From assembly GCA_053919585.1 (NCBI GenBank), contig CM132786.1: DNA of 64,000 nucleotides; one strand, written 5' to 3'. Position numbers and translations under genes: made by a program. The notes under the pieces were generated by a model. It saw only the letters and a list, made by a program, of their open reading frames with translations. It ran no database searches and was not told the DNA's origin. Source of the stretch: Euprymna scolopes (taxonomy: Eukaryota). This document shows positions 1,207 to 45,538 of this stretch, piece by piece. Within the stretch, counting starts at the first letter, position 1. The number at the start of each line of letters is the position of its first letter.

Positions 1207-2325
1207 GTTATTTCCCAGATGTAGCAAGAGTTCTCAATCATTAGCCGTGCATGGCTTTCATACAGGAAGAGAATTGTATCAAGAGTGAGATATCTTCTGG
1301 AGCGGTAGAAGACCCCTACCATTTTTAATAGAGGTATTGCAACGGATTGGATGGATGTGCTCCATTTAAGATTGGGAGAAAAGTTCAAGCCAAGAAGCTT
1401 GGCAAAACATGCAGCCTTCTAAAGAAGAAAATCAGTCATTGGTTTCAAGTGACGTCAGATGAAGATCTGAGCGGTTATGATGTAAAGATAGAAGTTTGAT
1501 TTTCCATGCAGTAAAAATAACCATTTATCTCTTTCTCCATTGTACCACGTGATCAAAGAGAGAGAGATAGAGAAAGAGAGAGAGAGAGAGAGTCAACGAG
1601 AACTATGTCATTTACGGCCTTTGATGTGTTGCCAGAGATGTTAGTGTCGTCAGCATAAATTTCAACGAATGATCTTATCCTATTATTTGGAAGATCATTG
1701 ATGTAGATCAGCAAGAGAGTTGGGCTGAAGATGTACCCATCGAGACCCCAGCATTCACACTGTGCGCTTCTGATTTCTGCCCATCAATTACTAATCTCAT
1801 GAATCCATCCGACAGAAACGTTGTAATAATTGAGAATACATCTCCATCTACCTCATGGCTGTTTATCTAAAGAAGTAGACCTTTATGCCATACCCTATCA
1901 AAGTCAAGAGCAAATTCCCTAGAAGGAAAGTCTCTGTCAAGAGATTCGTTAATTCCCATAGACATAACCTTTGCATGTTACTAAGAACATTCTTTTGTAT
2001 TGTGGCTCACTACTATTTTTTATTAAGAATCCGGCAACTTACTCCTGACGCACCAGAGACTAATTGGTATGTGCTGAGAGGAAGATGACTGATTACCCGA
2101 ATTCTCAGATACTAGGCATACTGATCAGGTTTTCCAGATCGTTGGGAAGCAATTCCCATTAAGACAACGCCTAAACAGCTCTGTAAATACGGAAGTTAGT
2201 TCTGGTTGAAGCTCTTTCAGAACTATAATTGGAATGCCGGAAGGGCCAGTTGATTTAATGGGATCATTATTTTTTTACTAGCTTGGCAAGGTAACATGCA
2301 GATTGTTATATGTCGCATGCTACAA
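1207..2325 (-). mobile_element. CR1-group LINE RT fragment, inverted (tail-to-tail with the preceding copy)
   Basis: Minus strand gives STGPSGIPIIVLKELQPEL, a YADDT-like site and the ORF NFSPNLKWSTSIQSVA...FYRSRRYLT, all matching the 28-30 kb copy. Contains a (GA)n tract at 1557-1592. Confidence 0.88.
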
Positions 2326-5235: not shown

Positions 5236-5542
5236 TGCTACTAATCCCATAAATAATGCCCCTGCAACTTATATTCTATATAGTAGCCCTTTCCTTCAAA
5301 GTTATACTGTTNNNNNNNNNNNNNNNNNNNNNNNNNNNNNNNNNNNNNNNNNNNNNNNNNNNNNNNNNNNNNNNNNNNNNNNNNNNNNNNNNNNNNNNNN
5401 NNNNNNNNNNNNNNNNNNNNNNNNNNNNNNNNNNNNNNNNNNNNNNNNNNNNNNNAAACATGTTAAAAAACCCATGAAAAATAGTTAAAAACACATTTAA
5501 TCTGAAAAGGAAACATTTGATATGTGGATAGTCTTTAATCAG

Positions 5543-9459: not shown

Positions 9460-11900
9460 CTCATACTATCATGTCTCATTCCCCAACATTAGGGGCCAAC
9501 GTTCTAATCTTTCAGAGGTTAAAACGCGTTTTTAGGAAACTAAACCAGTCCTATTGTTTCTAAGCGAAACAGGCATTTGGACAGACGATTTTACTAGAGG
9601 AGTTTGTAATTAAAGGATGCTCTAACTTAACTTCAAAGTCCTACGCCCAATATCGCCATGGGCATGGAATATGTGCCTATATTAAAGATGGCTTTCCATG
9701 TGGTAGGGGCATCTCCAGAGAATATCCTAGCATACCGTATATGTGTTTCCGGGTTAGACTTGCTGTTACTACTGCATTCATATTTACTCTCTGTCACCCC
9801 CACAACAGCGTAAATTCTATCTTTAAAAGAACTATGTTCAGGCTCCGTTCTGTTTCCTCTTGGATCTTCTGACCATTATGGTGTATCAAATAAGATAAAA
9901 ATGAAATGTAACACGTCCTCAGACAACTCTCCATCGTACAGTACCTCGATACACTATGGCTGACTGTATATCAGATCAACCTTTTCCTCGTTTAAAAATG
10001 GTGTTTCTTCTATTGTATAAGACCTGACGGAATGGTTAATTATAGGTATATACCTTTTCTTACTCTCGAAAATATTTCAGCAAAAACCTAACAGACCACC
10101 ATGGTTCTCTCCAGAATCTGCTGATGACATTTCGCACAGAAATCGCTTCTTTTATTACTTCCAACGTAATAGATGTATGGAGATTAAAGCCGCTTCCAAG
10201 ACTGCCAGCAACAACTGTAAGAAGGTAATAAAGCACGCAAGAGTGGTGTATGCTCAATCCGTCAAGTCCAAAGTAGCTCAGATCCGGCTCAGTTGCCACC
10301 AGTTTTGGCAAATAGCAAACAGAATGCTGAACAGAAGCGTGTGCTCTCTCCCAAGTATCATCAAGGACCTGAGGTAATCTCGGAAGTATCAGAAAAAGCC
10401 AAACACTTTGACACGTACTTTGCAGCTTATTCTACCCTCTGCAACTAAGGCCGCCAACCTCAAATACTTCCTCCTATATGAGAAAACACGCTAGGTTATA
10501 TACAAATATATGTACGTAATGTTGCCAAGCTAATCGAAAACCTTGATTCAAGTATAGCAACCGGCCCTCGCGGTATTCAGTTACAGTACTCAAACAAACT
10601 CTAACCAGAACTATCGCCCATACTTTAAAAAAAAAACTGTTTAAACGTTGTCTTAGAGAGAATTGCTTCCCATCACCCTGGAAAATCTCATCAGTATGCC
10701 CTGTATTTAAGAATTCAGGTGATCGCTCATCTCCCTCTCAGTGCAGACCATATGTCTCCTGTGCGTCATGAGTGAGAATCTGTGTTATATAGAAAGTAAT
10801 AAACCATCTCAGCAAAAATAAGATTTTTAGTGATGTTCTGTTAGATCTACAGCAGATTAGCTTACATAGGATTAGCGAATCTCTCGACGGAGGCAATCTT
10901 TCTAAGGCAATGGCTATTGACATATCAAATACCTTCTACAGGGTACGGTATAAATGTTTACTTCATAAGATCTCCAGCTATGGTATAGCTGGAAATGTAT
11001 TCTCAATTATCACATAATTTCTGTCTGATAGGTTCATAAGAGTAGTAGTTTATGGAAAAAATCAGGAGTGGTTGGTTACTTTTAATGACTCCAAAAACAA
11101 GATCCTCTCTTTATATCGTCAACGTTCTGATCCAATCTGGAATCAATTGAAATTAATAGGTCGCGTTTTGCGGAGGCGTAATGTTTTGACAAACTTCTGG
11201 GTTTGAGCTTTACTCTTGACATGAAATGGAACGCGTACATCACATCTGATGCCAGAAGCGCTGGAAAAATTGTTGGAGCCTTCTATCCATCCTAAATATC
11301 TCACTGTGTGATGCAATTCTCTATTTCTATAAGAGCCAAGTACATCCAAAGATGTAGTACTGTTGACATTTCGGCTAGAGCTTCTTGAAAGGAGGCCATG
11401 CCTTGATAAAGTTCAGAATAGACATCATTGCTTCGTAGGACATGCCCTTTTCTCTTCCCTGCAATATCTATCTCACAGAAGAGATGTTGCGAGTTTTTCT
11501 CTGCTTTATCTGTAGTTTCGTAGCAAGTCATCGACTGAACATCGATCCATGTTCCCCCCTCGCCACACTTTCACAAGGAACACTGCTCTAGATGAAACCA
11601 TTATCAATAATTCTCCTCACTTTTTATCTGTGCTTGCACCTAAACGTAGATTCCATGAAAAGAGCCTCTTTCTTAGAAGTGCACGCCTGTAAAAATGCCT
11701 TCTGTTTTCCTGCTTTCCAGCTGACTAAAATATGAGTGTCTTCAGGATCCACGTAAACAAGTTCTTGATGAGCCCTTCCAGTTAATTTAATTTCCATTAT
11801 TAAGGATTACTATATTGTCCAATTGACTACTGAACAGTCTTAACCCTTATCCTCGAGTGGTCTCTGGGCCTGGATCAGTGGTGAATTTTCAGTGAAAAAA
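9460..11900 (+). mobile_element. CR1-group LINE, degenerate ORF2 from APE endonuclease to 3' tail, with internal deletions
   Basis: Start translates to NIRGQRSNLSEV and GHGICAYIKDGFPC (APE N-terminus). 10130-11050 is colinear with 28170-29130. 3' stem-loop at 11846-11878, then an A tract. Confidence 0.88.
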
Positions 11901-12166
11901 GAAAATTATTTGTTTATTTTCCTAATATAACGTTGTCGTTTGTTTTAAGCGCATTTGATGCGTATTTTATTTTATTCCAATTAAAACAACGTTTCTATAT
12001 GAACTCTCATAGTTGACGTTATTTACGCGTTGCCTACGCGAAGTTAAAACATTTCAACATACAACCGCTAGAAAAAACCGCTAGAAAAAACCGCTAGAAA
12101 CAACCGCTAAAAACAACGAGCTGCACTTTACTAACAGAAGAAAAAACAAAAAAAGAAAAAATATAA

Positions 12167-12205
12167 CACGCTGAAGATGGACTATACCTCTGAAATATAT
12201 TTGTG
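12167..12205 (+). ncRNA. Minimal type I hammerhead ribozyme motif (array copy, both core boxes intact)
   Basis: CACG-CTGAAGA-T-GGAC-TATAC-CTCT-GAAA-TATA-TT-TGTG. Helix I is CACG/TGTG, helix II is GGA/TCT, and loop 3 is the palindrome ATATAT. Confidence 0.7.
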
Positions 12206-12687
12206 ATCAATTTCAAACAAGTAAAATATCTGTTTATTTTCCTAATATTACGTTGTAGTTGGCTTTCCAGCGCACTTGATGTGTATTTTATATTATTCAA
12301 ATTATAACGACGTTTCTATATGAACTCTCATCCTTGACGTTATTTTCGCGTTTCCTATGCATAATTCAAACATTTAAAAATACAACCGCTATAAACAAAG
12401 CGCGGTTCTTTCAAAACGGACTTATTTCTCAAAATTTACAAAGTGGTTATGAAAATTTAAAGGAAAAAAGAAACAAAACCACGCACTGAAGATTTAATAT
12501 ACCTATTAAAATATTTGTAATAAATTAGACACAAGTAACATATTGGTTTATTTTCCTAATATTGCGTTCTAGATGGCTTTCAAGCGTACTTGATGCGTAT
12601 TTTATTTTATTCAAATAAAACAACGCTTCTATATTAACTCTCATATTTAACGTTTTTTCTCGCGTTGCTTACGCAGAGATAAAACAT

Positions 12688-13833
12688 GGTATGTCATAAA
12701 GGCCTACATGACAAGATCTCCAACTACGGTATAACTGAAAATGTTCTCTCTATCATTAAATCATTTCTCTCTGATGGGCCCATATGAGTAGTGGTTGATG
12801 GACAAAAATCAGAGGCTTGCATTATTAAGGCTGTAGTCCCTCAATGGTTAATCCTGGGCCCAACTCTCTTCCTGATCTAAATCAATGATCTCTCTAAACA
12901 CATGCTTAAATCATTCGTTGACAACTATGCTGATGACACGACCATCTATAGCAACACATCAAAGGCCGTAAATGACAAAGTTCTCTCTGATTCTCCATCC
13001 TCTGATCTTGAGCGCGTGGTACTGTGGGGGAAGAGGTGGTTGGTTACTTTTAATGCATCTAAAACCAACCTTCTATCTTTACATCATCAACGCTCTGATC
13101 CCCATCTTCCATCAATTGAAATGGATGGCTCTCGTCTAGGAGAATACCCATGTTTCGACAAGCTTCTGGGCTTGACCTTAACTCCTCATCTGAAATGGAG
13201 CACGCACATCAAGTCTGTTGCTAAGGTCGCTGGAAAGATAGTGGGATCCTTCTACCGCTCCAGTAGATATCTCACTACTGATGCCATTCTCTATCTATAT
13301 AAAACCCAAGTATGTCCAAGGATGGAATACTGCTGTCATATCTGTGCAGGAGCTTCTCAAAACCGCCTATGCTGCATTGGCAGAGTACAAAATAGACTTC
13401 GGGGCTTAGTGGAGCTTGCCCTTTTCTCTTCCCTGCTACCTCCCTCCCATAGAAGAGACGTCGCGAGCCTATATTTGTTTTACCGTTATTTCCATTGCAG
13501 GTGCTCGTCTGAACTCCAATCAGTCGTCTTGCTGAATACACTGTCCAAAACTTTCGCCATTCTTTATCTATGCCTAAATCAAAATGTAGATTCCATGAAC
13601 AAAGCTTCTTTCTTAGAACTGCACGCCTGTGGAACTCTGTTCGGTCTGCCTGCTTCAAACCTGACTACAACCTGAATGTATTCAAGTCCAACGTAAACAA
13701 ATTCCTGATGAACCGCTCCCTTAAGTAGAAACTTTATTAACTCTTAACACTACCGTACTGTACTTACAATAAGCCTTATCCCTGAGTGGCTTCCGGGTCT
13801 TGATAAGTGGTGAACACCTTGTAAAAAAAAAAC
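12688..13833 (+). mobile_element. 5'-truncated CR1-group LINE inserted into the HHR array
   Basis: Contains the 257-aa ORF 12902-13675 (YADDTT, PRMEYCCHIC, SHRRDVASLYLFYRYFH), the 3' stem-loop at 13775-13807 and an A11 tail. Monomer sequence resumes at ~13834 with about 25 bp missing. Confidence 0.93.
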
Positions 13834-16390
13834 ACTCGTGGCTTTTTACATACTTCTTTCTCCAAATTTACAAAAGAAAAACGGGGACAAAAGAAACAAA
13901 ACAACACACTAAAGATGGAGTATACCCCTGATATATATTTGTTATTAATTTCAAATAAGTAAACCATTTGATTAGTTTCATAATATTACGTTATATTCTG
14001 CGTTCAACAGCACTTGGTGCGTATTTTATTTTATCCAAATTAATACCACGTGGTTATATGAACTCTGATCCTTGACGTTATTCTCCTATTGTCTAAGCAA
14101 ATTCCAAGCATTTCAAAATGCAACCGCTAAAAACAACGCCCGGTTGTTTACAAACCTTGTTGTTTTCCAAATTTAAAACATAGCAACAAAACGAAAACGG
14201 GGGAAAAGCACACTGAAGATGTAATATGCTCTAGGTTATATTTGTGTATAATATTATACAAGTAAAATATGTGTTTATTTTCCTTATATTACGCTGTGTT
14301 TGGGTTTCAAACGCTATCGATGCGTTTTTATTTTATTTTATTCAAATTAAAACAACGTATCCATATGAAATCTCATCATTTACGTTATTCTCACGTTGCC
14401 TATGACAATTCCAAGCATTACAAAATACAACCACGAAAAAAAACAAAAACATACGGCTTCTTACAAAAAATACTTCTTTCTCCAAATTCACAAACTGATA
14501 ATAAAAAAGAGGAAAAATTAATAAAAGAGTGAGTATACGTCTGAAATATATTTGTGATCAATTTCAACAAGTAAAATATTTTTATATTTTCATAATGTTA
14601 CGTTGTCTATTGCTATCAAGCGAACTTCTTGCGTATTTTATTTTATTCAAATTAAAACCACGTTTCTATATGAATTCTTGTCCTTGCCGTTATTCCCGCG
14701 TGCCCCACGCACAGTTAAGACATTTCAAAATAGAAACCAGTCGCGGCTCTTTACCAGCGGACGTCTTCTTCTAAAGTTGAAACTTGGCCAATAAGAAGAA
14801 AAGGAAAAAAGAAACACACCTGCCTACTGAAGAGTGAGTATACTTCTAAAATACATTTGTGATGAACTTCAAACAAGTAAAATATGCGTGTATTTTCCTA
14901 ATATTACGTTGTATTTTGCTTTCAAGCGCACTTGATGCGGATTTTTTAATTCAAATTAATACAACGTTTCTATATGAACTCTAAACCTTGACGTCATTCC
15001 CGCGTTGCCTACGCACAGTTCAAACATTTCAAAATACACCCGCTAGAAGCAACGCATAGCTCTTTACAAACATACTTCTTTCTTTAAATTTACATCATGG
15101 CAAGGAAGCAGTAAAAGGAAACAAAAAACAAAACAAAACAAAAGAACACACTGAAGATAGACTATACCTCTAAAGTATATTTGTGATGAATTTTAACATA
15201 AAATATGTGTTTATTTTTTAATATTATACTGTATTTGAATTTCAAGGTAAATGTATACGTTTTTTTTCATTCCAGTTAAACCAACGTGTCTATATTAACT
15301 CACCTCATTGACGTTATTCTCCGTTACTTATGCGCAATTCAAACATTTCCAAATACAACCACTAGTAACAACACTCGGCTCTTTTCAAACAGAGTTCTTC
15401 ATCAAAATTTACAAAATCGCAAGGAAGAAGAAAAGAAAAACAGACACAAAACAACCAACTGGGGATGAAGTATACCTCTCTTATATTTTGTGTATATTTC
15501 ATACGAGTAAGATATTTATATGTTTTCTTAATATTACGTTGTCTACGGCTTTCAAGAACACTTGAAACCTTTTGTTATTTTATTCCAATTAAAACAACCT
15601 TTCATATGGACTCTCATTATTGACGTAATTCCCGCGTTGCCTACGCAAATTTCAAATATTTCAAAATACAACGGCAAGAAAGAACGCACGGCTTCTTACA
15701 AACATATTTCTTTCTCCAAATTTGCAAAGTGGTAATTGAGAAAAAAAGGTGAAAAAGAAACAAAACAACACATTGAAGAGGAGTATATCTCTGTAATATA
15801 TTTTGGTAAATTTTAAACAAATAAAATATTCATTTGCAAAATATTATTGTATTTGGCTTCAAATCGCACGTGAAGCGCTTTTATTTCATTCAAATAAAAA
15901 AAATGTCCATATGAACTCTTCTCATCATTTACGTTATTATTGCGTTGCATACACACAGTTCAAACATTTCAAATTACAACCGTTAGAAACATCGCGGGAC
16001 TCTTTACGAACAGACTTCTTTTTTTTCCAAATTTACAACATGGCAAGAAGAAGAAAAAGAAAAAAAGAAACAAAACAAGACACTAAATATGGAGTATACC
16101 TTTGAATGTATTTGAGTATAATTTTAAAAAAAGTAAAATATGTGTTGTTTTTTTAAATAATATTACGTTGTATTTGGCTTTGTAGCGCAGTTGATGCGTT
16201 TTTTTATGAATAGTAACACATCTTTTTATATGCACTCTTATCCTTGACGTTATTCTAGCGTTGCCTACGCATTTCTCGAACATTTCAAAATACAAGCGCT
16301 TACAACAACGCGCGGCTCTGTACAAAAAATACTTCTTTCGAGAAATTTACAAAATAGCCAAAAATAAGATAAGGAAAAATAGAAACAAAA

Positions 16391-16435
16391 CAACACACTG
16401 AAGATGGAGCATACCTCAGAAATATATTTGTGTTG
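16391..16435 (+). ncRNA. Minimal type I hammerhead ribozyme motif (best array copy)
   Basis: CAACACA-CTGAAGA-T-GGAG-CATAC-CTCA-GAAA-TATA-TT-TGTGTTG. Perfect 7-bp helix I, intact CUGANGA and GAAA, GAG/CTC helix II, palindromic loop 3. Predicted cleavage 3' of 16428. Confidence 0.8.
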
Positions 16436-19075
16436 AATTTCAAACACGTACTATATTTGTTTATTTTCTTTATAGAAGGTTGTATATGGCTTTCAAGCGC
16501 ACGATTGGTTCTTTTACTATTTTATTCAAATTAAAACAACGTTTCTATATGAAATCTAATCTTTGACGTCCTTCTCGCGTTGCTTTCGCAGAGTGCAAAT
16601 ATTTTAAAATACAACCGCTAAAAACAACACACAATCCTTATCAAACAGATTTCTCACTCAAATGTACAGCGTTGTAAGTAAGGAGAAAAGAAAAAAAGGA
16701 AAAAAAAACATACAGAAAATGGAGTATACCCTTGAAATATATTTGTGATGAATTTAAAACGAATAAAATATGTGTTAATTTTCCTTTTATTACCTTGTAT
16801 TTGGCACGAAAGCGAACTTAATGCATGTTTTATTTTATCTCAATTAAACCATTTCTATACGAATTCTCACCTTTGACTTTATTCTTGCCTTGCGCAATCA
16901 CAGTTCAAACATTTCAAAATAGAAATCAGTCTCCGCTCTTTATCATCAGACTTCTTTTTCTCAAATTTACAACATGGCAGGGAAGAAGAAAAGGAAAAAC
17001 ACAACAACATACTGAAGACGGAGAATACGTCTGGTACACATTGGTGATAAATTTCAACCAAATAAAATATTTGTTTGTGTTCCTAATATTACGTTGTATT
17101 TTGCATTTACGCGCACTCGATAGTTTTTTTTTATTTATTCAAATAAAAACAATGTTTCTATATGAACTGTTATTCTTGACCTTCTTCTCGCGTTGCCTAC
17201 GCATAGTTCAAAAATGTCAAACAACAACCGCTAGAAACAACGCGAGATTCTTTACAAACATACTTCATTTTTCAAATTTACAACACGTGGAGGAAGAAGA
17301 AAGGGAAACACCACAAAAACACACTGAAGATCGAGTATACCTCTAAAATATATTTGTTATACATTTCAAACAAGTAAAATATTTGTTTGTTTTGCTAATA
17401 TTACGCTGTATTTTAATTGTTAGCGCCCTTTGGCTTTTAAACGCACTCGATACGTATTTTATTTTATTCTTAATGTATCGTTGTCAACGGCTGGTTGCCG
17501 ATCACTACGTTCATCCTCTTAAAAAATCTCGTTGCCACCACGAAATTTATTAAACTATTATTGTTCGGTGCGTGCAGTAGTAGTTTTTATGCAACACACT
17601 TTGGTTATATCGCAAGCTTTGTCAGCAGATTTTTGACCTAGCTTGTATTAAAAATATATAAAGTGTGAATTTATTTTTTCGAGTTTGTATTAAACATTGT
17701 ACCAAGCACCAATTGCTTTTTAAAACATTGTGATTTAAAGGTATCGATAGAAAGCAACACACTTGTTAAAAATGATATATAAATTAACGGCAGTTAACGA
17801 AATCTTATTTGGAAATAAACTGTACATTCTTCTCAACCTTATAGGTGACTATAATTTTTCGAAAGGTCATTGATTGTGCAAGTCAATTTTTTAAAATTGA
17901 ACATTATATGTGATTTGTATGTTTAACTTATTTTTATAGTATTTTCTTTTAGATAATATTTGTGACCTTTTACTTGTAACTTGTCAATTATATTGTTGGC
18001 AAATAGTTTGTTTCATGCAGTATTTTTTATGTATTTTGATTAATTGAATACATATTTCGTGAAATAATTGTTTATGGTGTCTAACTTCGTTATTTTGTTG
18101 AACTTGTTTTGCTTACCTATATATGTTTGTTTAATATATCATGCATAACTGCATGATATGTCTAGACTGCTTCAAAAAATAAAATCGAACGTGCATCCGT
18201 TTTGTTGTAGTAAATCTGTTAGCACTTTTCTCCAATTAAGAATATGGTTGATGCAAATGTCAATATGACGAAATTTGTAAATGATAATTGTAAAAACCAA
18301 AACAAGTCGTCCTTCACCTTTGAATAAAGTCATCTGATTTTTACGATAACTTTGCTATCATCAATATTTTAACAGAAAACACTGCTCTTACTACAAAAAA
18401 TAGCATGCTATTGTGTCTATGCTGACGATTGAAACAAGACTGACACGATTGAAACTATCAAATATCTATAAAAGCTGAACGTGGCTGACGATAAAATAAC
18501 ATAACACTTAAAAACTTGGCATTAAATTGACTTACAGATAAAAGAAATATATTACGTATACATCCATATCCTTTCACAGTTTACGGGGAAATTATGAACG
18601 TGATTTTGGGTGTGGCGCGTATTTTTTAAGTCTATGCTAAAAGCAAACACATTGGAACCGCATTTATCAAAATAGAAAAGGCATGAAATTGTGAAATGCA
18701 TGGAAATCCATACAAACGCTTGTCTCACTTAAAAGATTAAGCTGACGTTGACCCAAGACAAACTTTGTGTAAAGACACATGAGATGTGGTGAATGCGATA
18801 TATCCAACAGTAAAGAATATTACAAGCACATAGTTTTAACAAATATATTAATAAAATCAGTGACGATGATATTGTTCAGGTTAAAATAAGAAGAGGTATT
18901 GGAAATATAGCGTTATAATCAGAAACACTCATCAATTAAACTAGTACTCTATCACACTTTTCTCTCTTACACGCATGCATATTATATTCTATTTGCATCT
19001 CTGTGCATTTGTTTCATATACAGGGTTTTCAAAAATTCATATGGCTTACGCACAGATATATATATATATATATTC

Positions 19076-20832: not shown

Positions 20833-21230
20833 TTTTTTTTTTTACACGGTGGTCACCACTTATCAAGGACCGGAAGCCGCGCACGGATAAGTGTTATTGC
20901 AAGTACAGAACGTTAATGTGGAGATTTGATGAAGTGTTTACTTAAGCGGGCGGTTCATTAGGAATTTGTAAACGGTGGACTTGAAGACATCGAAGTTGTA
21001 GTCAGATGGGAAGCAGGCAGACGGAACAGAGTTCCACAGGCGTGCAATTCTAAGAAACAGCTTTGTTCATTGAATCTCCGTTTTGATTTAGGCACATATT
21101 AAGAGTGGGGGGAATGTTTCACAGTGGATTCAGCTAGACAGGTGTTTTTCGTGAAAGATTCGCGAGGGGGGACCAGAGGTTGGAGTTCAAACGAGAACCT
21201 GCCATGGAAATAACGATAAAACAAGGATAT
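20833..21230 (-). mobile_element. CR1-group LINE 3' end (5'-truncated)
   Basis: Minus ORF SLFYRYFHGRFSFELQPLVPPRESFT, 3' stem CACTTATC/GATAAGTG (20857-20893) and a T11 tract (poly-A on the minus strand). Confidence 0.9.
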
Positions 21231-27419: not shown

Positions 27420-28022
27420 TCTATTAGCAGTAGTCTTCGGTAAGCTTTTTTATCCGAAAATTGTACGACGAAAGATCGGGTACTGTTGCCACAGCTGGAC
27501 ACGAGCTTATTGAAGCAGCTCATCTTACCTTGACAGAGTTCAAAATAGATTTCGTATCGCGGTAGAGGATTCATCTTCTTTCTAACAGAAGAGATGGTGT
27601 GGGGCTGTTTTTGTTTTATCGTTATTTTCTTGAAAAGTGCGTGTGTGAGATTCAATCCAGGGCTCCTTTCTCTAAACATTCAGGAGAAACATTCGTTTGG
27701 CTTAAAACACTATCAATAATGTCTTTCACACTTTGTCTGTGCCTAAACCTAAATGTAGATTCGCGGGACAAAGCTTCTTTTATTACAACTTCACACCTAT
27801 GGAACTCTCTCCCGTTTCCCTGCTTTTAAGCTACCTACAGTACGGTCGCCTTCAAGTCCAATGTAAACACGTTTTTGTGAGCCGCCCCCATTAAGAAATT
27901 CATTTTCAACATTTCCACCTCTAACGATATAAAAATATTACCCTGTGCAACTATACACACTTTAACACTTATTCTTCAGTGGCATCTCCGCCTTGATAAA
28001 TTCTTCATTCTTTGCAAAATAA
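27420..28022 (+). mobile_element. CR1-group LINE 3' fragment
   Basis: GLFLFYRYFLEKC and HLWNSLPFPCF, followed by a degenerate 3' stem-loop at 27968-28000. Confidence 0.85.
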
Positions 28023-28755: not shown

Positions 28756-30210
28756 GAATTCAGGTGATCGCTCATCCCCCTCTCAGTACAGGCAAATAAG
28801 TCTCCTGTGCGTCATGAGTAAGTTGCTGTAATCTGTGTTAAATACAGAAGTAATCAACAATCTCAACAAAAATAACCTTCTTAGTGACACTCAATATGGT
28901 TTCCGTTCTGCTAGATCTACAGCAGTTGTGCTTACAGTTATATCTCACAGGATTACCAAATCTCTCGACGGAGGCAACCTTTCTAGGGCAATTGCTCTTG
29001 ACATATCTAAGGCCTTTGATAGGGTATGGCATAAAGGTTCACTTCATAAGATCTCTAGCTATGGTATAGCTGGAAATGTCTTCTCAATTATTAAATCATT
29101 TCTTTCTGATAGGTTCATAAGAATAGTAGTTGAAACCCACAGTATTAATGCCGGTGTCCCTCAGGGATCCATCCTGGGCCAAACTCTTTTCCTGATCTAC
29201 ATTAATGATCTTCAAAATCACATCCTTAAATCATTTGTAGACATTTATGCTGACGACACTACCATTTATGGTAGCACATCTAAGACATTAAACGACCAAG
29301 TTCTCTCCAATTCTCTCTCCTCTGATCTTGAGCATGTAGTACAATGGGGAAAGGAGTGGCTGGTTACTTTTAATGCATCTAAAACCAAGCTTCTCTCTTT
29401 ACATAATCAACATTCTTATCCACATCTGGCATCAATTGAAATGAATGGCTCTCGTCTTCAGGAGGCCTCAAGTTTTGACAAGCTTCTGGGCTTGACCATT
29501 ACTCCTGATCTTAAATGGAACACGTCCATCAAATCTGTTGCCAAGGCCGCTGAAAAAATGGTGGGATCTTTCTATCGATCCAGTAGATATCTCACTGCTG
29601 ATGCAATTCTCTATCTATATAAGAGCCAGGTACGTCCAAGGATGGAATACTGTTGCCACATCTGGGCAGGAGCTGCTAGAAAGGACTGGGCCTGCCTTGA
29701 TAGAGTTCAAAATAGACTTCGCAGCCTCGTAGGAGATGCCCTTTTCTCTTCCTTGGAACCTCTATCTCACAGAAGAGATGTTGCGAGTTTGTCTCTGATG
29801 TATCGTTATTTTCATGGAAAGTGTTCGACTAAGCTTCAATCTATGGCCCCCCCTCGCCAAACTTTCACAAGAAACACTCGTCTAGCTGTAAACACTATCA
29901 ATAATGCCCCCCATTCTTTATCTGTGCATAAACCTAAGCGTAGATTCCATGAACAAAGCTTTTTTTATTAGAACTGCACGCCTGTGGAATTGTCTTCCGT
30001 TTTCCTGCTTTCCGGCTGACTACAATATGGTTGTCTTCAAGTCTTACGTAAATAAGTTCTTGATGAGCCGTTCCATATAAGTCATCAAATTTAACAAAGG
30101 TTCATTACTAATGATTATTATATTTTCTAATTTCTACTGTACACTCTTTAGCCCTCAACCTTGAGTGGCCTCTTGGCCTTGATAATGAGTTGATACCTAT
30201 GAAAAAAAAA
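28160..30210 (+). mobile_element. CR1-group LINE, best preserved 5'-truncated copy
   Basis: Two long ORFs separated by a frameshift, followed by a 3' UTR, the stem-loop and A9. Confidence 0.95.
28835..29971 (+). pseudogene. LINE reverse transcriptase domain (378-aa open stretch)
   Basis: QYGFRSARST, LDISKAFDRVWH, GVPQGSILG, YADDTT and RPRMEYCCHIW. Confidence 0.95.
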
Positions 30211-30234
30211 AGAAAATATCCAAAGGTAGCAAGT

Positions 30235-30386
30235 TCTAATTGAATCGTCCCCCTAAGTAATCCAAGTTGTAAAATTCCCACTGTTTACTATGCTAAAATC
30301 ACAATGACTAATGTATACCTATTAACCCTTATCCTCGAGTGGCCTCTGGGCCTTGATAAGTGGTGACACCCTTGTAAAAAAAAAAA
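30235..30386 (+). mobile_element. Second, very short LINE 3' end stacked on the previous poly(A)
   Basis: AAGTTCTAATTGAATCGTCCCCCTAAGTAA (ORF end), then CTTATCCTCGAGTGGCCTCTGGGCCTTGATAAG and A11. Confidence 0.85.
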
Positions 30387-45004: not shown

Positions 45005-45339
45005 ACTGCCATCCGTAGTTGTTTTCGTCTCACGACATTTCTGACCAATTTACCTCGCCTTCGGTGGGATTGGCACGCCTTCGGTGGGATTGAAACCGCT
45101 ATCTTCAGACAATGTTCATCTGAATCGTAGATCAGATAATAAATACACGTGGATTTATAAGATCAAAGAATCCAACCTTGATCGCCCTTCGGGGCCCGTG
45201 GCGCAGTTGATAGAGACGTTGAATCTCTACGGTTCCAGATGAACATTGTCTGAAGATAGCGGTTTCAATCCCACCCAAAGCGTGCCAGAGGTTAATTGGT
45301 CAAAAATGTGGTGAGACGACAACAACTACGGATGGCAGT
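45005..45339. repeat. ~115-bp inverted repeat (arms 45005-45131 and 45226-45339)
   Basis: ACTGCCATCCGTAGTTGTT..GGGATTGAAACCGCTATCTTCAGACAATGTTCATCTG is the reverse complement of CAGATGAACATTGTCTGAAGATAGCGGTTTCAATCCC..AACAACTACGGATGGCAGT. The left arm has an internal duplication, CGCCTTCGGTGGGATTG x2. Confidence 0.95.
45184..45287 (+). ncRNA. tRNA-like Pol III head (SINE-like or pseudo-tRNA)
   Basis: A box TGGCGCAGTTGA at 45199-45210 and B box GGTTTCAATCC at 45261-45271. Anticodon-like stem-loop GAAT-CTCTACG-GTTC and variable-arm hairpin CAGATGA-ACA-TTGTCTG. Confidence 0.65.
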
Positions 45340-45370
45340 GATGGCTGAGAATGCAGTAAGGAGATTCGAA

Positions 45371-45434
45371 GTTCCTATCCGTCGCGGTTACCACCTGACG
45401 AAGGCCAGAGGAAGTTGGCCGAAACGGTGTGAAC
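45371..45434 (+). ncRNA. Type III hammerhead ribozyme
   Basis: CCGTC^ - GCGG-TTA-CCAC - CTGACGA-A - GGCCA-GAGGAAGT-TGGCC - GAAA-CGG. Helix III CCGT/ACGG is extended by GTTC/GAAC. GUC triplet, perfect 5-bp helix II, and one C-A mismatch in helix I. Predicted cleavage 3' of 45383. Confidence 0.85.
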
Positions 45435-45538
45435 CAATAAAAAGATCCAAAAACAACAACTAACAAAGATGAGACTAATAGTTAAAAATAAAAATTAACT
45501 TATAATGCTCATCTCAAAAAAATTAATTCCAATTAAGG

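What the first reader, a model, noticed from the sequence alone, without database searches (positions are those of the whole stretch)
11902..17470. Tandem ~311-bp satellite in which every monomer carries a minimal type I hammerhead ribozyme (retrozyme-like array)
Seen: 14 evenly spaced copies of a motif with consensus CAACACA-CTGAAGA-T-GGAG-TATAC-CTCT-GAAA-TATA-TT-TGTG. This gives helix I, the CUGANGA box, a 4-bp helix II (GGAG/CUCU), the GAAA box, a palindromic loop 3 and a UH. CTGAAGA is exact in 8 copies, GAAA in 4, and both in 2 (12171, 16398). Established: minimal type I HHRs with palindromic loop 3 occur in Penelope pLTRs and in metazoan non-LTR retrozymes or satellites (newt satellite 2, cricket pDo500, schistosome SMalpha). 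Those multimeric transcripts self-cleave to monomers that can circularise. Inference: this is the genomic footprint of a ~311-nt non-coding self-cleaving RNA amplified by rolling-circle-like reverse transcription, probably an uncatalogued family. Copies here are diverged, so this locus may be old.
Basis: partly seen in the sequence, partly recalled or inferred. Interest (0 to 1): 0.9.

Follow-up and report, generated by a model that had tools for sequence, protein, structure and literature searches.

The report
Decayed array of hammerhead-bearing retroelement units
This is an old, mutated 15-unit tandem insertion of a small non-coding jumping element whose ~317-bp units each carry a minimal hammerhead ribozyme motif of the kind found in Penelope-like retrotransposons; the kind is already known, and this copy is dead.

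Summary
Window 11895-17470 (+) contains 15 tandem units of 296-326 bp, broken by a 1,142-bp LINE fragment.

The motif is not a chance look-alike. A relaxed hammerhead descriptor gives 0 hits in 20-30 Mb of matched random sequence. It recovers both this family and the genome's Rfam-grade hammerheads.

Related subfamilies keep the catalytic boxes while changing loop 2 and N7. Helix I changes by compensatory pairs. One sister family has U3-A8 in place of C3-G8.

The extra U after A9, the short helix I and the palindromic loop 3 are published hallmarks of Penelope-type minimal hammerheads. That explains why Rfam finds nothing.

The family is a dispersed retroelement:
- more than 2,000 exact-anchor copies;
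- 3' ends clustered about 90-140 nt past the cleavage site;
- scattered 5' ends;
- head-to-head pairs;
- (TA)n at 3' junctions.

The genome's canonical retrozymes share this layout.

The window array decays neutrally and has no intact motif. Self-cleavage, circular RNA and rolling-circle copying remain unshown.

The scan had already found canonical hammerhead retrozymes elsewhere in this genome.

Verdict: a new member of a known kind, of modest interest.

The parts
11895..17470 (+). Whole tandem array: 15 units of the ~317-bp family (subfamily A). The 5' end is truncated inside unit 1. The 3' end lies at the family's usual terminus (...ACGTATTTTATTTTATTC).
11895..12140 (+). Unit 1, 5'-truncated (starts ~20 nt past the predicted cleavage site, no motif). 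Contains a 13-bp micro-repeat (AACCGCTAGAAAA x4.2) at 12063-12117.
12165..12207 (+). Motif copy, unit 2. Both boxes are intact, but helix II is broken (GGAC/CUCU) and helix I carries a change.
12480..12521 (+). Motif copy, unit 3. CTGAAGA is intact; helix II and GAAA are lost.
12691..13832 (+). Inserted 5'-truncated LINE fragment (RT C-terminal part, ORF 12902-13675, YADD motif). Not part of the element; it interrupts unit 3/4.
13903..13945 (+). Motif copy, unit 4 (CTAAAGA, GATA: both boxes mutated).
14207..14248 (+). Motif copy, unit 5 (CTGAAGA intact; helix II and GAAA lost).
14516..14558 (+). Motif copy, unit 6 (first box lost, GAAA intact).
14821..14863 (+). Motif copy, unit 7 (CTGAAGA intact, AAAA in place of GAAA).
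15145..15187 (+). Motif copy, unit 8 (CTGAAGA intact, AAAG in place of GAAA).
15453..15493 (+). Motif copy, unit 9 (CTGGGGA, GAAA lost).
15767..15807 (+). Motif copy, unit 10 (TTGAAGA, GTAA, bulged U deleted).
16077..16119 (+). Motif copy, unit 11 (CTAAATA, GAAT).
16392..16434 (+). Motif copy, unit 12. This is the best-preserved copy: both boxes are intact, and only the 10.1-11.1 pair is broken (G/A).
16707..16749 (+). Motif copy, unit 13 (CAGAAAA, GAAA intact).
17006..17048 (+). Motif copy, unit 14 (CTGAAGA intact, GGTA in place of GAAA).
17318..17360 (+). Motif copy, unit 15 (CTGAAGA intact, AAAA in place of GAAA). The unit ends at the family's 3' terminus at 17470.
10967..11894 (+). Flanking 5'-truncated copy of the same abundant LINE, whose 3' end abuts the array start. 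Context only.

Best explanation
The array is one old, multi-unit insertion of a non-autonomous, non-coding retroelement family. The unit is ~317 bp at 33% G+C. I estimate roughly 10^4 units in this 5.9-Gb genome. Earlier scan notes and run labels call the genome a mollusc.

Each unit carries a Penelope-type minimal type I hammerhead. Its parts are: helix I of 4-6 bp; CUGANGA; one unpaired nucleotide after A9; a 4-bp helix II (GGAG/CUCY); GAAA; a one-pair helix III capped by the palindromic loop UAUA; and a U-U cleavage dinucleotide. A conserved ~95-nt tail follows and ends at the element's 3' terminus.

Shown:
- the family is dispersed, with 3' ends clustered at two preferred sites and scattered 5' ends;
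- it forms partial tandems and head-to-head pairs, as Penelope-like elements do and as the canonical hammerhead retrozymes of this genome do;
- the hammerhead architecture has been maintained by selection across subfamilies;
- the window copy is dead.

Inferred mechanism:
1. Tandem units are transcribed.
2. Two neighbouring motifs pair through their palindromic loop 3 into a double hammerhead and cut the transcript, probably inefficiently.
3. A Penelope-like RT/GIY-YIG enzyme supplied in trans starts cDNA synthesis at an AT-rich site about 90 nt (less often about 130 nt) downstream of the ribozyme, at a nick that often lies next to (TA)n.
4. It copies more than one unit of a multimeric or circular template. 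The usual product has fewer than 2 units; occasionally a long homogeneous array such as this 15-mer results.
For: Array and decay. Unit identities show no dependence on distance within the array, so the units diverged in a star-like way. This fits a single birth event.

Family structure:
- copies on all large contigs.
- one full unit plus a partial unit is the common form, and inverted pairs are frequent.
- 2,049 exact-anchor copies, against 0 for the control pattern.
- 3' ends fall at consensus positions 120-139 in 32 of 62 elements and at 150-179 in 17 of 62. (TA)>=5 lies at the 3' flank in 16 of 62 and at the 5' flank in 0 of 62; background is 4.5%.

Same layout in Rfam-grade hammerhead retrozymes of this genome.

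Motif is not chance. The relaxed descriptor gives 0 hits in 20-30 Mb of composition-matched random sequence. The partial descriptor gives 2 per 30 Mb. The same descriptor finds 62 canonical hammerheads, 28 A-type copies and 11 B-type copies.

Selection on the fold:
- The core boxes, the unpaired nucleotide, helix II and loop 3 stay fixed.
- N7 and loop 2 vary.
- Pair 1.2-2.2 is G-C, A-U or C-G in different subfamilies.
- Pair 1.4-2.4 is G-C or U-A.
- C3-G8 becomes U3-A8 in sister family E, whose tail is homologous.
- 92.9% of cells are paired, against 83.4% in shuffles (0 of 500 reach the observed value).

Literature:
- PMC7229834 and the preprint 10.64898/2026.07.22.740005 describe tandem non-LTR retrozymes as PLE derivatives.
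- PMC8557442 describes PLE tandem and inverted insertions, a (TA)n bias, and non-autonomous derivatives that share 3' ends with their partners.

RNA libraries from several studies contain family sequence.
Against: - No Rfam hammerhead model matches any copy, even at E<=10 on ~460 nt.
- The A-type motif folds into the hammerhead secondary structure, but at only -3.7 kcal/mol, no better than shuffles.
- Subfamilies C and D have a weak helix I (2+2 or 3 bp) yet still multiplied. Mixed A/B copies with a C-A mismatch also exist.
- 5' ends do not cluster at the predicted cleavage site.
- The unit RNA is not highly self-paired: z = -1.35, against -3.4 for the canonical retrozyme.
- No read-level RNA data were available, so cleavage and circles are untested.
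- Helix II (4 bp) is shorter than the 6-8 bp reported for schistosome and Drosophila PLE hammerheads.
Confidence: 0.62

Rival explanations
1. The motif is a real hammerhead by descent but no longer works as a ribozyme in this family. It persists as part of the 3' module that the reverse transcriptase recognises. Multimers arise because RT initiates internally on uncleaved, linear read-through transcripts of tandem copies. No self-cleavage or circular RNA is involved.
For: - PMC11167929: a Poseidon PLE initiates RT internally. Hammerhead mutations do not affect insertion in vitro, and no RNA-seq reads end at the cleavage site.
- PMC4209133: PLE minimal hammerheads cleave poorly in vitro.
- PMC8557442: Naiad PLEs thrive without canonical hammerheads.
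- Here, 5' ends are not enriched at the cleavage site and 61 of 62 elements are shorter than 2 units.
- The motif is thermodynamically weak, and subfamilies with a weak helix I still amplified.
- The ~95-nt tail is the most conserved part between subfamilies A and B.
Against: The U3-A8/C3-G8 swap and the compensatory helix I changes preserve catalytic geometry specifically, not merely a hairpin. The invariant boxes are exactly the catalytic nucleotides. The 15 units of the window array were near-identical at birth, which is easiest to explain with a circular or very homogeneous template.
Confidence: 0.25
2. The motif is a chance resemblance to a hammerhead inside an AT-rich satellite or SINE.
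For: Rfam finds nothing. The boxes are short and the sequence is AT-rich. In the window only 2 of 14 copies keep both boxes.
Against: The descriptor gives 0 hits in 20-30 Mb of matched random sequence, so the expectation is about 1e-8 per unit. The motif sits on the sense strand at the same place relative to the 3' terminus as in Rfam-grade retrozymes of this genome. Covariation includes U3-A8. The odd features are the published PLE hallmarks (PMC4209133).
Confidence: 0.02
3. The array is an ordinary satellite grown in place by unequal crossing-over or replication slippage, with no RNA intermediate.
For: It is a 5.6-kb head-to-tail array of diverged units in an intergenic, repeat-rich region.
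Against: Thousands of dispersed short copies have clustered 3' ends and variable 5' ends. The window array ends at that same terminus. Unit similarity does not depend on distance within the array, unlike arrays homogenised in place. A possible 12-13-bp target duplication is seen at L028.
Confidence: 0.03
4. The family is a SINE mobilised by the CR1/L2-like LINE that abuts and interrupts the array.
For: Two same-strand copies of one LINE family touch the array.
Against: There is no similarity between the LINE 3' end and the unit. The LINE is simply abundant: it occurs in 12 of ~57 unrelated 3-kb loci and about 7 times in this window. Partial-tandem and head-to-head structures and (TA)n junctions are Penelope-style, not LINE-style (PMC8557442).
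Confidence: 0.04

Closest known systems
Minimal hammerheads of Penelope-like elements (min-HHR; Cervera & de la Pena 2014, PMC4209133)
   Same: CUGANGA and GAAA boxes. A conserved unpaired nucleotide between A9 and G10.1. G10.1-C11.1 (G-U in the commonest subfamily). Short helix I (4-6 bp). A one-pair helix III with a palindromic loop, implying action as a dimer. Many fast-evolving consensus families per genome with compensatory changes. A U3-A8 variant. Occurrence in direct and inverted repeats.
   Different: Helix II is 4 bp here, against 6-8 bp in schistosome and Drosophila examples. The motif sits in a ~317-bp non-coding tandem unit; it was not seen next to an RT/GIY-YIG ORF. No partner PLE was identified.
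Metazoan non-LTR retrozymes (Cervera & de la Pena 2020, PMC7229834; Li et al. 2026 preprint 10.64898/2026.07.22.740005)
   Same: Units of ~150-450 bp, low G+C, dimers to large multimers, one type I hammerhead per unit, non-coding, dispersed, and linked to PLEs.
   Different: Classical retrozymes carry canonical type I hammerheads with loop 1-loop 2 contacts and give highly self-paired circular RNAs. Here the ribozyme is of the minimal PLE type, Rfam does not detect it, the unit RNA is weakly structured (z = -1.35), and circles are unshown.
Canonical tRNA-headed hammerhead retrozymes of the same genome (e.g. the 410-bp family at C8:10.43 Mb; Rfam RF00163, 42-57 bits)
   Same: Same insertion anatomy: variable 5' end, full units plus a partial unit, preferred 3' end(s) ~70-100 nt past the ribozyme, head-to-head pairs, (TA)n flanks, and a palindromic loop 3.
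   Different: No sequence similarity outside the boxes. The canonical family has a GC-rich 6-bp helix I, a 2-bp helix III, no unpaired nucleotide after A9, a tRNA-like segment and a strongly structured unit.
Newt satellite 2 / axolotl HHR_Amex1
   Same: A tandem ~330-bp unit. The hammerhead has a single-pair helix III and a palindromic tetraloop, and is active mainly as a dimer.
   Different: The amphibian motifs keep the loop 1-loop 2 tertiary contacts and the canonical A9-G10.1 junction.

Membership tests
PLE-type minimal hammerhead (min-HHR) | Catalytic boxes CUGANGA and GAAA in the right order and spacing | tested here: met
   Family consensus and subfamilies A, A', B, B2 and C. Family E has UUGANAA, the documented U3-A8 variant (PMC4209133). 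In the window only 2 of 14 copies keep both boxes.
PLE-type minimal hammerhead (min-HHR) | [quoted passage not shown] | tested here: met
   U in subfamilies A-D and A in family E; invariant within each.
PLE-type minimal hammerhead (min-HHR) | G10.1-C11.1 closing pair of helix II | tested here: met
   G-C in A', B, B2, C and E. G-U in the commonest A type (a CpG site, CTCCG to CTCTG).
PLE-type minimal hammerhead (min-HHR) | Short or absent helix III with a palindromic sequence, allowing a double hammerhead | tested here: met
   A15.1-U16.1 plus loop UAUA (AUAUAU is palindromic), invariant in all subfamilies.
PLE-type minimal hammerhead (min-HHR) | Helices supported by compensatory changes between consensus families | tested here: met
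   Three pairs carry changes on both sides. 92.9% of cells are paired, against 83.4% in shuffles (0 of 500) and at most 61% when partners are slid. The rows are seven consensus motifs read, so they represent few independent events.
PLE-type minimal hammerhead (min-HHR) | Location in the pLTR/tail of an element encoding RT and GIY-YIG | not tested
   No autonomous partner was found. Further loci could not be fetched. Only the PLE-style insertion anatomy was shown.
PLE-type minimal hammerhead (min-HHR) | Site-specific self-cleavage | not testable with these tools
   Needs in vitro transcription or end-mapping of RNA.
Rfam Hammerhead_1 (RF00163) and other Rfam hammerhead models | Score at or above the gathering threshold | tested here: not met
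   No hammerhead hit at the gathering threshold in the window. None at E<=10 on the array, on an A-type copy 96% identical to the consensus or on a B-type copy. The same model finds at least 73 hits of 42-57 bits elsewhere in the genome.
Metazoan non-LTR retrozyme | Short (150-450 bp), low-GC tandem units, each with a type I hammerhead, dispersed in the genome | tested here: met
   317-bp unit at 33% G+C. Copies range from 0.5 to 15 units and lie on all large contigs.
Metazoan non-LTR retrozyme | Expressed as unit-length, highly self-paired circular RNA | tested here: inconclusive
   Family sequence occurs in contigs of poly(A) RNA-seq libraries, but contigs show no ends, strand or junctions. 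The predicted fold of the circular unit is only 54% paired, z = -1.35.
C/D-box snoRNA (weak Rfam snoR160 look-alike) | Score at or above the gathering threshold | tested here: not met
   17-23 bits against a gathering score of 42, E 0.7-8. Judged chance, from UGAGGA/CUGA-like words.

The most novel reading that the evidence does not exclude
These Rfam-invisible minimal hammerheads are catalytically active as dimers in vivo and process tandem transcripts into ~317-nt linear and circular RNAs. That would make this a second, hidden class of retrozyme in molluscs beside the canonical ones. The A/A'/B/C/E series would then be a natural mutational ladder (bulged nucleotide, G-U against G-C at 10.1-11.1, U3-A8) for asking what a Penelope-type hammerhead needs in order to work.
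Probability: 0.3. Interest if true: 0.5.

Novelty: new member of a known kind. Interest (0 to 1): 0.35.

Why it matters
This case shows that standard covariance models miss a whole, abundant hammerhead-bearing family, on the order of 10^4 units plus sister families. The same genome's canonical ribozymes score 42-57 bits with those models, so counts of animal hammerheads and retrozymes based on Rfam are underestimates. The family offers side-by-side natural variants, including a U3-A8 core swap and compensatory helix I changes, in elements with a homologous tail. That is a convenient system for testing whether Penelope-type hammerheads cleave in vivo or serve another role in retrotransposition, a question the literature leaves open. 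The window locus itself is a dead fossil with no functional consequence that I can see.

Tried and rejected
- Rfam at gathering and at E<=10 on the array, on an A-type copy and on a B-type copy gave no hammerhead. Only sub-threshold snoRNA or miRNA look-alikes appeared, which I judged to be chance.
- tRNA scan of the array: none. Unlike the genome's canonical retrozymes, this family has no tRNA-like head.
- Similarity between the 410-bp canonical retrozyme unit and this unit: none beyond 7-11-mers.
- LINE partner hypothesis: rejected.
- Higher-order repeat or in-place growth of the array: rejected, because identity does not depend on distance within the array.
- Preferential conservation of the motif within the window array: absent, 84.2% against 83.3%, as expected for a dead copy.
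- 5' ends at the cleavage site: no enrichment.
- RNA evidence: Logan contigs from four runs contain many family variants but give no ends or strand.
No RT/GIY-YIG neighbour could therefore be examined.
- A pattern expecting CUGANGA upstream of family E's helix II found nothing. This is what revealed the U3-A8 core.
- Complex prediction and the protein tools were not relevant.

Full report
**1. Observation**

The repeat is real. One unit used as a BLAST query hits 15 consecutive places on the + strand between 11895 and 17470. The periods are 296-326 bp, and MAFFT aligns the units end to end. TRF reported only two units at period 319 because the copies are 66-84% identical.

The first unit is 5'-truncated and has no motif, so there are 14 motif copies (coordinates).

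A 1,142-bp 5'-truncated LINE fragment (12691-13832; ORF with a YADD motif) splits units 3 and 4, with about 25 bp of the unit lost. Another copy of the same LINE (~10967-11894) ends exactly where the array begins.

**2. The array belongs to a dispersed family with retroelement anatomy**

The window lies in a 5.9-Gb assembly, on contig C4. Earlier scan notes and the labels of public runs call it a mollusc; I did not verify this.

A single unit finds copies on all large contigs. In 29 fetched loci the usual form is a variably truncated 5' part, one full unit, and a partial unit. The partial unit stops at one sequence...CTTGATGCGTATTTTATTTTAT(TC). The window array ends at that same sequence, at 17470.

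An exact 20-nt anchor from the tail occurs 2,049 times, against 0 for the reversed control. Allowing for about 7% decay, this implies on the order of 10^4 units.

For 62 elements in my loci:
- 3' ends fall at consensus positions 120-139 in 32 and at 150-179 in 17;
- (TA)>=5 lies at the 3' junction in 16, at the 5' junction in none, against a 4.5% background;
- 5' ends are scattered, and 61 of 62 elements are shorter than 2 units.

Head-to-head inverted pairs are frequent. L028 shows a possible 12-13-bp target duplication.

This is the anatomy described for Penelope-like elements and their non-autonomous derivatives: partial tandems (pLTRs), inverted 5'-truncated copies, a 30-40-bp 'tail' variant of the end, and a (TA)n bias (PMC8557442).

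**3. The same genome supplies a positive control**

Rfam Hammerhead_1 finds at least 73 hits of 42-57 bits in this genome. One example is a 410-bp tandem family whose ribozyme is GUCUAA-CUGAUGA-GCCC-loop-GGGC-GAAA-C-UCGA-G-UC-UUGGAC.

Its copies have the same layout as my family: a variable 5' end, full units plus a partial unit that ends ~70-100 nt past the ribozyme, inverted pairs and (TA)n flanks. There is no sequence similarity between the two units outside the catalytic boxes.

So the motif in my family sits on the sense strand, at the same position relative to the 3' terminus as a bona fide hammerhead in elements of the same design.

**4. Is the motif a hammerhead?**

Rfam says nothing. 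This holds at the gathering threshold and at E<=10 on the array, on a copy 96% identical to the family consensus and on the best subfamily.

The architecture is nevertheless far from chance. I wrote a relaxed descriptor with these elements:
- CUGANGA;
- a 0-1 nt bulge;
- helix II of at least 4 bp;
- GAAA;
- 1-2 bp of helix III with a palindromic tetraloop;
- U16.1;
- H17;
- helix I of at least 4 bp.

It recovers 62 canonical hammerheads, 28 A-type copies and 11 B-type copies in my loci. It gives 0 hits in 20-30 Mb of order-1 Markov sequence with the unit's or the window's composition. Even without the helix I and palindrome requirements there are only 2 hits per 30 Mb. The expectation is about 1e-8 per unit.

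**5. Subfamilies show selection for the fold**

An unbiased list of 100 anchored copies, my loci and two further pattern searches define these types:

| Type | Helix I 5' | Core box | Unpaired nt | Helix II 5' | Loop 2 | Helix II 3' | Box 2 | Loop 3 | Site | Helix I 3' |
|---|---|---|---|---|---|---|---|---|---|---|
| A | AACACA | CUGAAGA | U | GGAG | UAUAC | CUCU | GAAA | UAUA | UU | UGUGAU |
| A' | as A | as A | U | GGAG | as A | CUCC | GAAA | UAUA | UU | as A |
| B / B2 | AACAUA | CUGAGGA | U | GGAG | UUUAG / UAUAG | CUCC | GAAA | UAUA | UU | UAUGUU |
| C | AAAAUA | CUGAGGA | U | GGAG | UUUGA | CUCC | GAAA | UAUA | UU | UAAAUU |
| E | AAAAGA | UUGA(U/C)AA | A | GGAG | UCUUA | CUCC | GAAA | UAUA | UU | UCUUU |

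Family E has 623-747 exact hits and occurs as ~300-bp tandem or inverted pairs. Its tail is recognisably homologous to the A/B tail.

What stays fixed across these types:
- the catalytic nucleotides;
- the presence of an unpaired nucleotide after A9 (U in A-D, A in E);
- helix II;
- loop 3;
- the U-U site.

What changes:
- N7 (A, G, U or C);
- loop 2;
- pair 1.2-2.2, which is G-C in A, A-U in B and C-G in E;
- pair 1.4-2.4, which is G-C or U-A;
- the tertiary pair C3-G8, which becomes U3-A8 in E.

On the seven consensus motifs, 92.9% of cells pair, against 83.4% in shuffles (0 of 500). Three pairs carry changes on both sides. Slid controls reach at most 61%. I read these rows from printed matches and they represent few independent events, so the statistic is illustrative rather than formal.

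Between A and B the ~95-nt tail is almost identical, the motif carries 7-9 structure-neutral changes, and the body is ~15-20% diverged.

**6. The odd features are the published hallmarks of Penelope-type minimal hammerheads**

Cervera and de la Pena (PMC4209133) describe the following for PLE min-HHRs:
- a short helix I (4-5 bp);
- a conserved G10.1-C11.1;
- palindromic positions 15.2-16.2 and loop 3;
- many rapidly evolving consensus families with compensatory changes;
- a U3-A8 variant in schistosome Cercyon elements;
- action as dimers;
- low activity in vitro.

All but the last two can be tested here, and all are met. The only difference is a 4-bp helix II, against 6-8 bp. The G-U at 10.1-11.1 in the commonest A type is a CpG-to-TpG change of the A' state.

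That also explains the Rfam silence: relative to the model there is a one-nucleotide insertion, a missing 15.2-16.2 pair and AU-rich short helices.

**7. What is not shown**

*Catalysis and circles.* The A motif's minimum-energy fold is the hammerhead secondary structure, but at only -3.7 kcal/mol (z = 0.15), against -18.7 kcal/mol (z = -2.8) for the canonical ribozyme. The circular unit is 54% paired with z = -1.35, against z = -3.4 for the canonical retrozyme.

*RNA.* Contigs of poly(A) RNA-seq libraries from several studies hold family pieces. The C11.1 variant makes up 33-55% of contig depth in two RNA runs, against 13% in a run that may be DNA. Contigs cannot show ends, strand or junctions, and this difference is only suggestive.

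*Other weaknesses.* 5' ends of genomic copies are not enriched at the cleavage site. Types C and D, with a weak helix I, still multiplied.

*Published counter-example.* For a real PLE, Frangieh et al. (PMC11167929) showed internal initiation of reverse transcription. Hammerhead mutations had no effect on insertion in vitro, and no reads ended at the cleavage site. The preferred 3' ends seen here, ~90 nt (less often ~130 nt) past the ribozyme, fit internal initiation.

*What this leaves open.* The shortage of copies longer than 2 units fits linear templates. The star-like divergence of the 15 window units fits a circular or very homogeneous template. I cannot decide between the two, and both may occur.

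**8. The window locus itself**

It belongs to subfamily A. The units are ~16% diverged from their common ancestor. The motif columns are no better conserved than the rest (84.2% against 83.3%), and no copy passes the descriptor. It is a dead, old insertion.

The neighbouring LINE copies are coincidental. That LINE is everywhere in the genome and shares nothing with the unit.

**9. Verdict**

It is unproven on self-cleavage, circular RNA and rolling-circle copying.

The kind is known: PLE minimal hammerheads and non-LTR retrozymes derived from PLEs. Earlier work in this scan had already found canonical hammerhead retrozymes elsewhere in this genome. This is a further family, invisible to Rfam, with a nice covariation series.

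Noticed in passing
window 12691-13832 and ~10967-11894; also 9-1088, 1252-1835(-), 20834-21224(-), 27731-27895, 29026-30385: An abundant CR1/L2-like LINE family (RT C-terminal ORF with a YADD motif). One 5'-truncated copy is inserted in the array and another abuts its start, both on the + strand. The same LINE occurs in 12 of ~57 unrelated 3-kb loci, so the adjacency looks coincidental.
   Followed up: partly
window 12063-12117: A 13-bp unit (AACCGCTAGAAAA) of the monomer has expanded to 4.2 copies in unit 1 only: a micro-repeat born inside a satellite unit.
   Followed up: no
genome, e.g. C1:118814089-118814445, C2:166685349-166685702 (not in the window): Sister family E: ~300-bp tandem or inverted units whose hammerhead core reads UUGA(U/C)AA-A-GGAG...CUCC-GAAA, i.e. 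U3-A8 in place of C3-G8, with helix I UCUUU/AAAGA. It has 623-747 exact pattern hits. Its tail is homologous to that of the window's family.
   Followed up: partly
genome C8:10432194-10435515 (L035-L043): A very young array (99.5-100% identical units) of a 410-bp canonical hammerhead retrozyme with a tRNA-like segment. It begins directly after a (TA)n tract. I used it as a positive control.
   Followed up: partly
loci L002-L030, L051-L080 (element 3' junctions): (TA)n tracts lie at the 3' junction in 16 of 62 elements but never at the 5' junction. If the elements simply landed inside (TA)n, both sides should show it. The tract may be extended or created at priming, or the upstream part may be lost.
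   Followed up: no
window 45184-45522: Another first-reader note places a tRNA-headed element with a type III hammerhead here. The Rfam gathering scan of the whole window returned no family at all, and my type I descriptor found nothing on either strand. I did not examine the site further.
   Followed up: no
window, 11 runs of N (e.g. 5312-5455, 52627-52908): 1,866 masked or gap bases in 11 blocks of 128-282 nt. I left them untouched.
   Followed up: no
window 14516-14796 and 16707-16979 (units 6 and 13): These two units, seven apart, share an indel and five derived substitutions against an otherwise star-like array. This may be a small gene-conversion tract, or chance.
   Followed up: no
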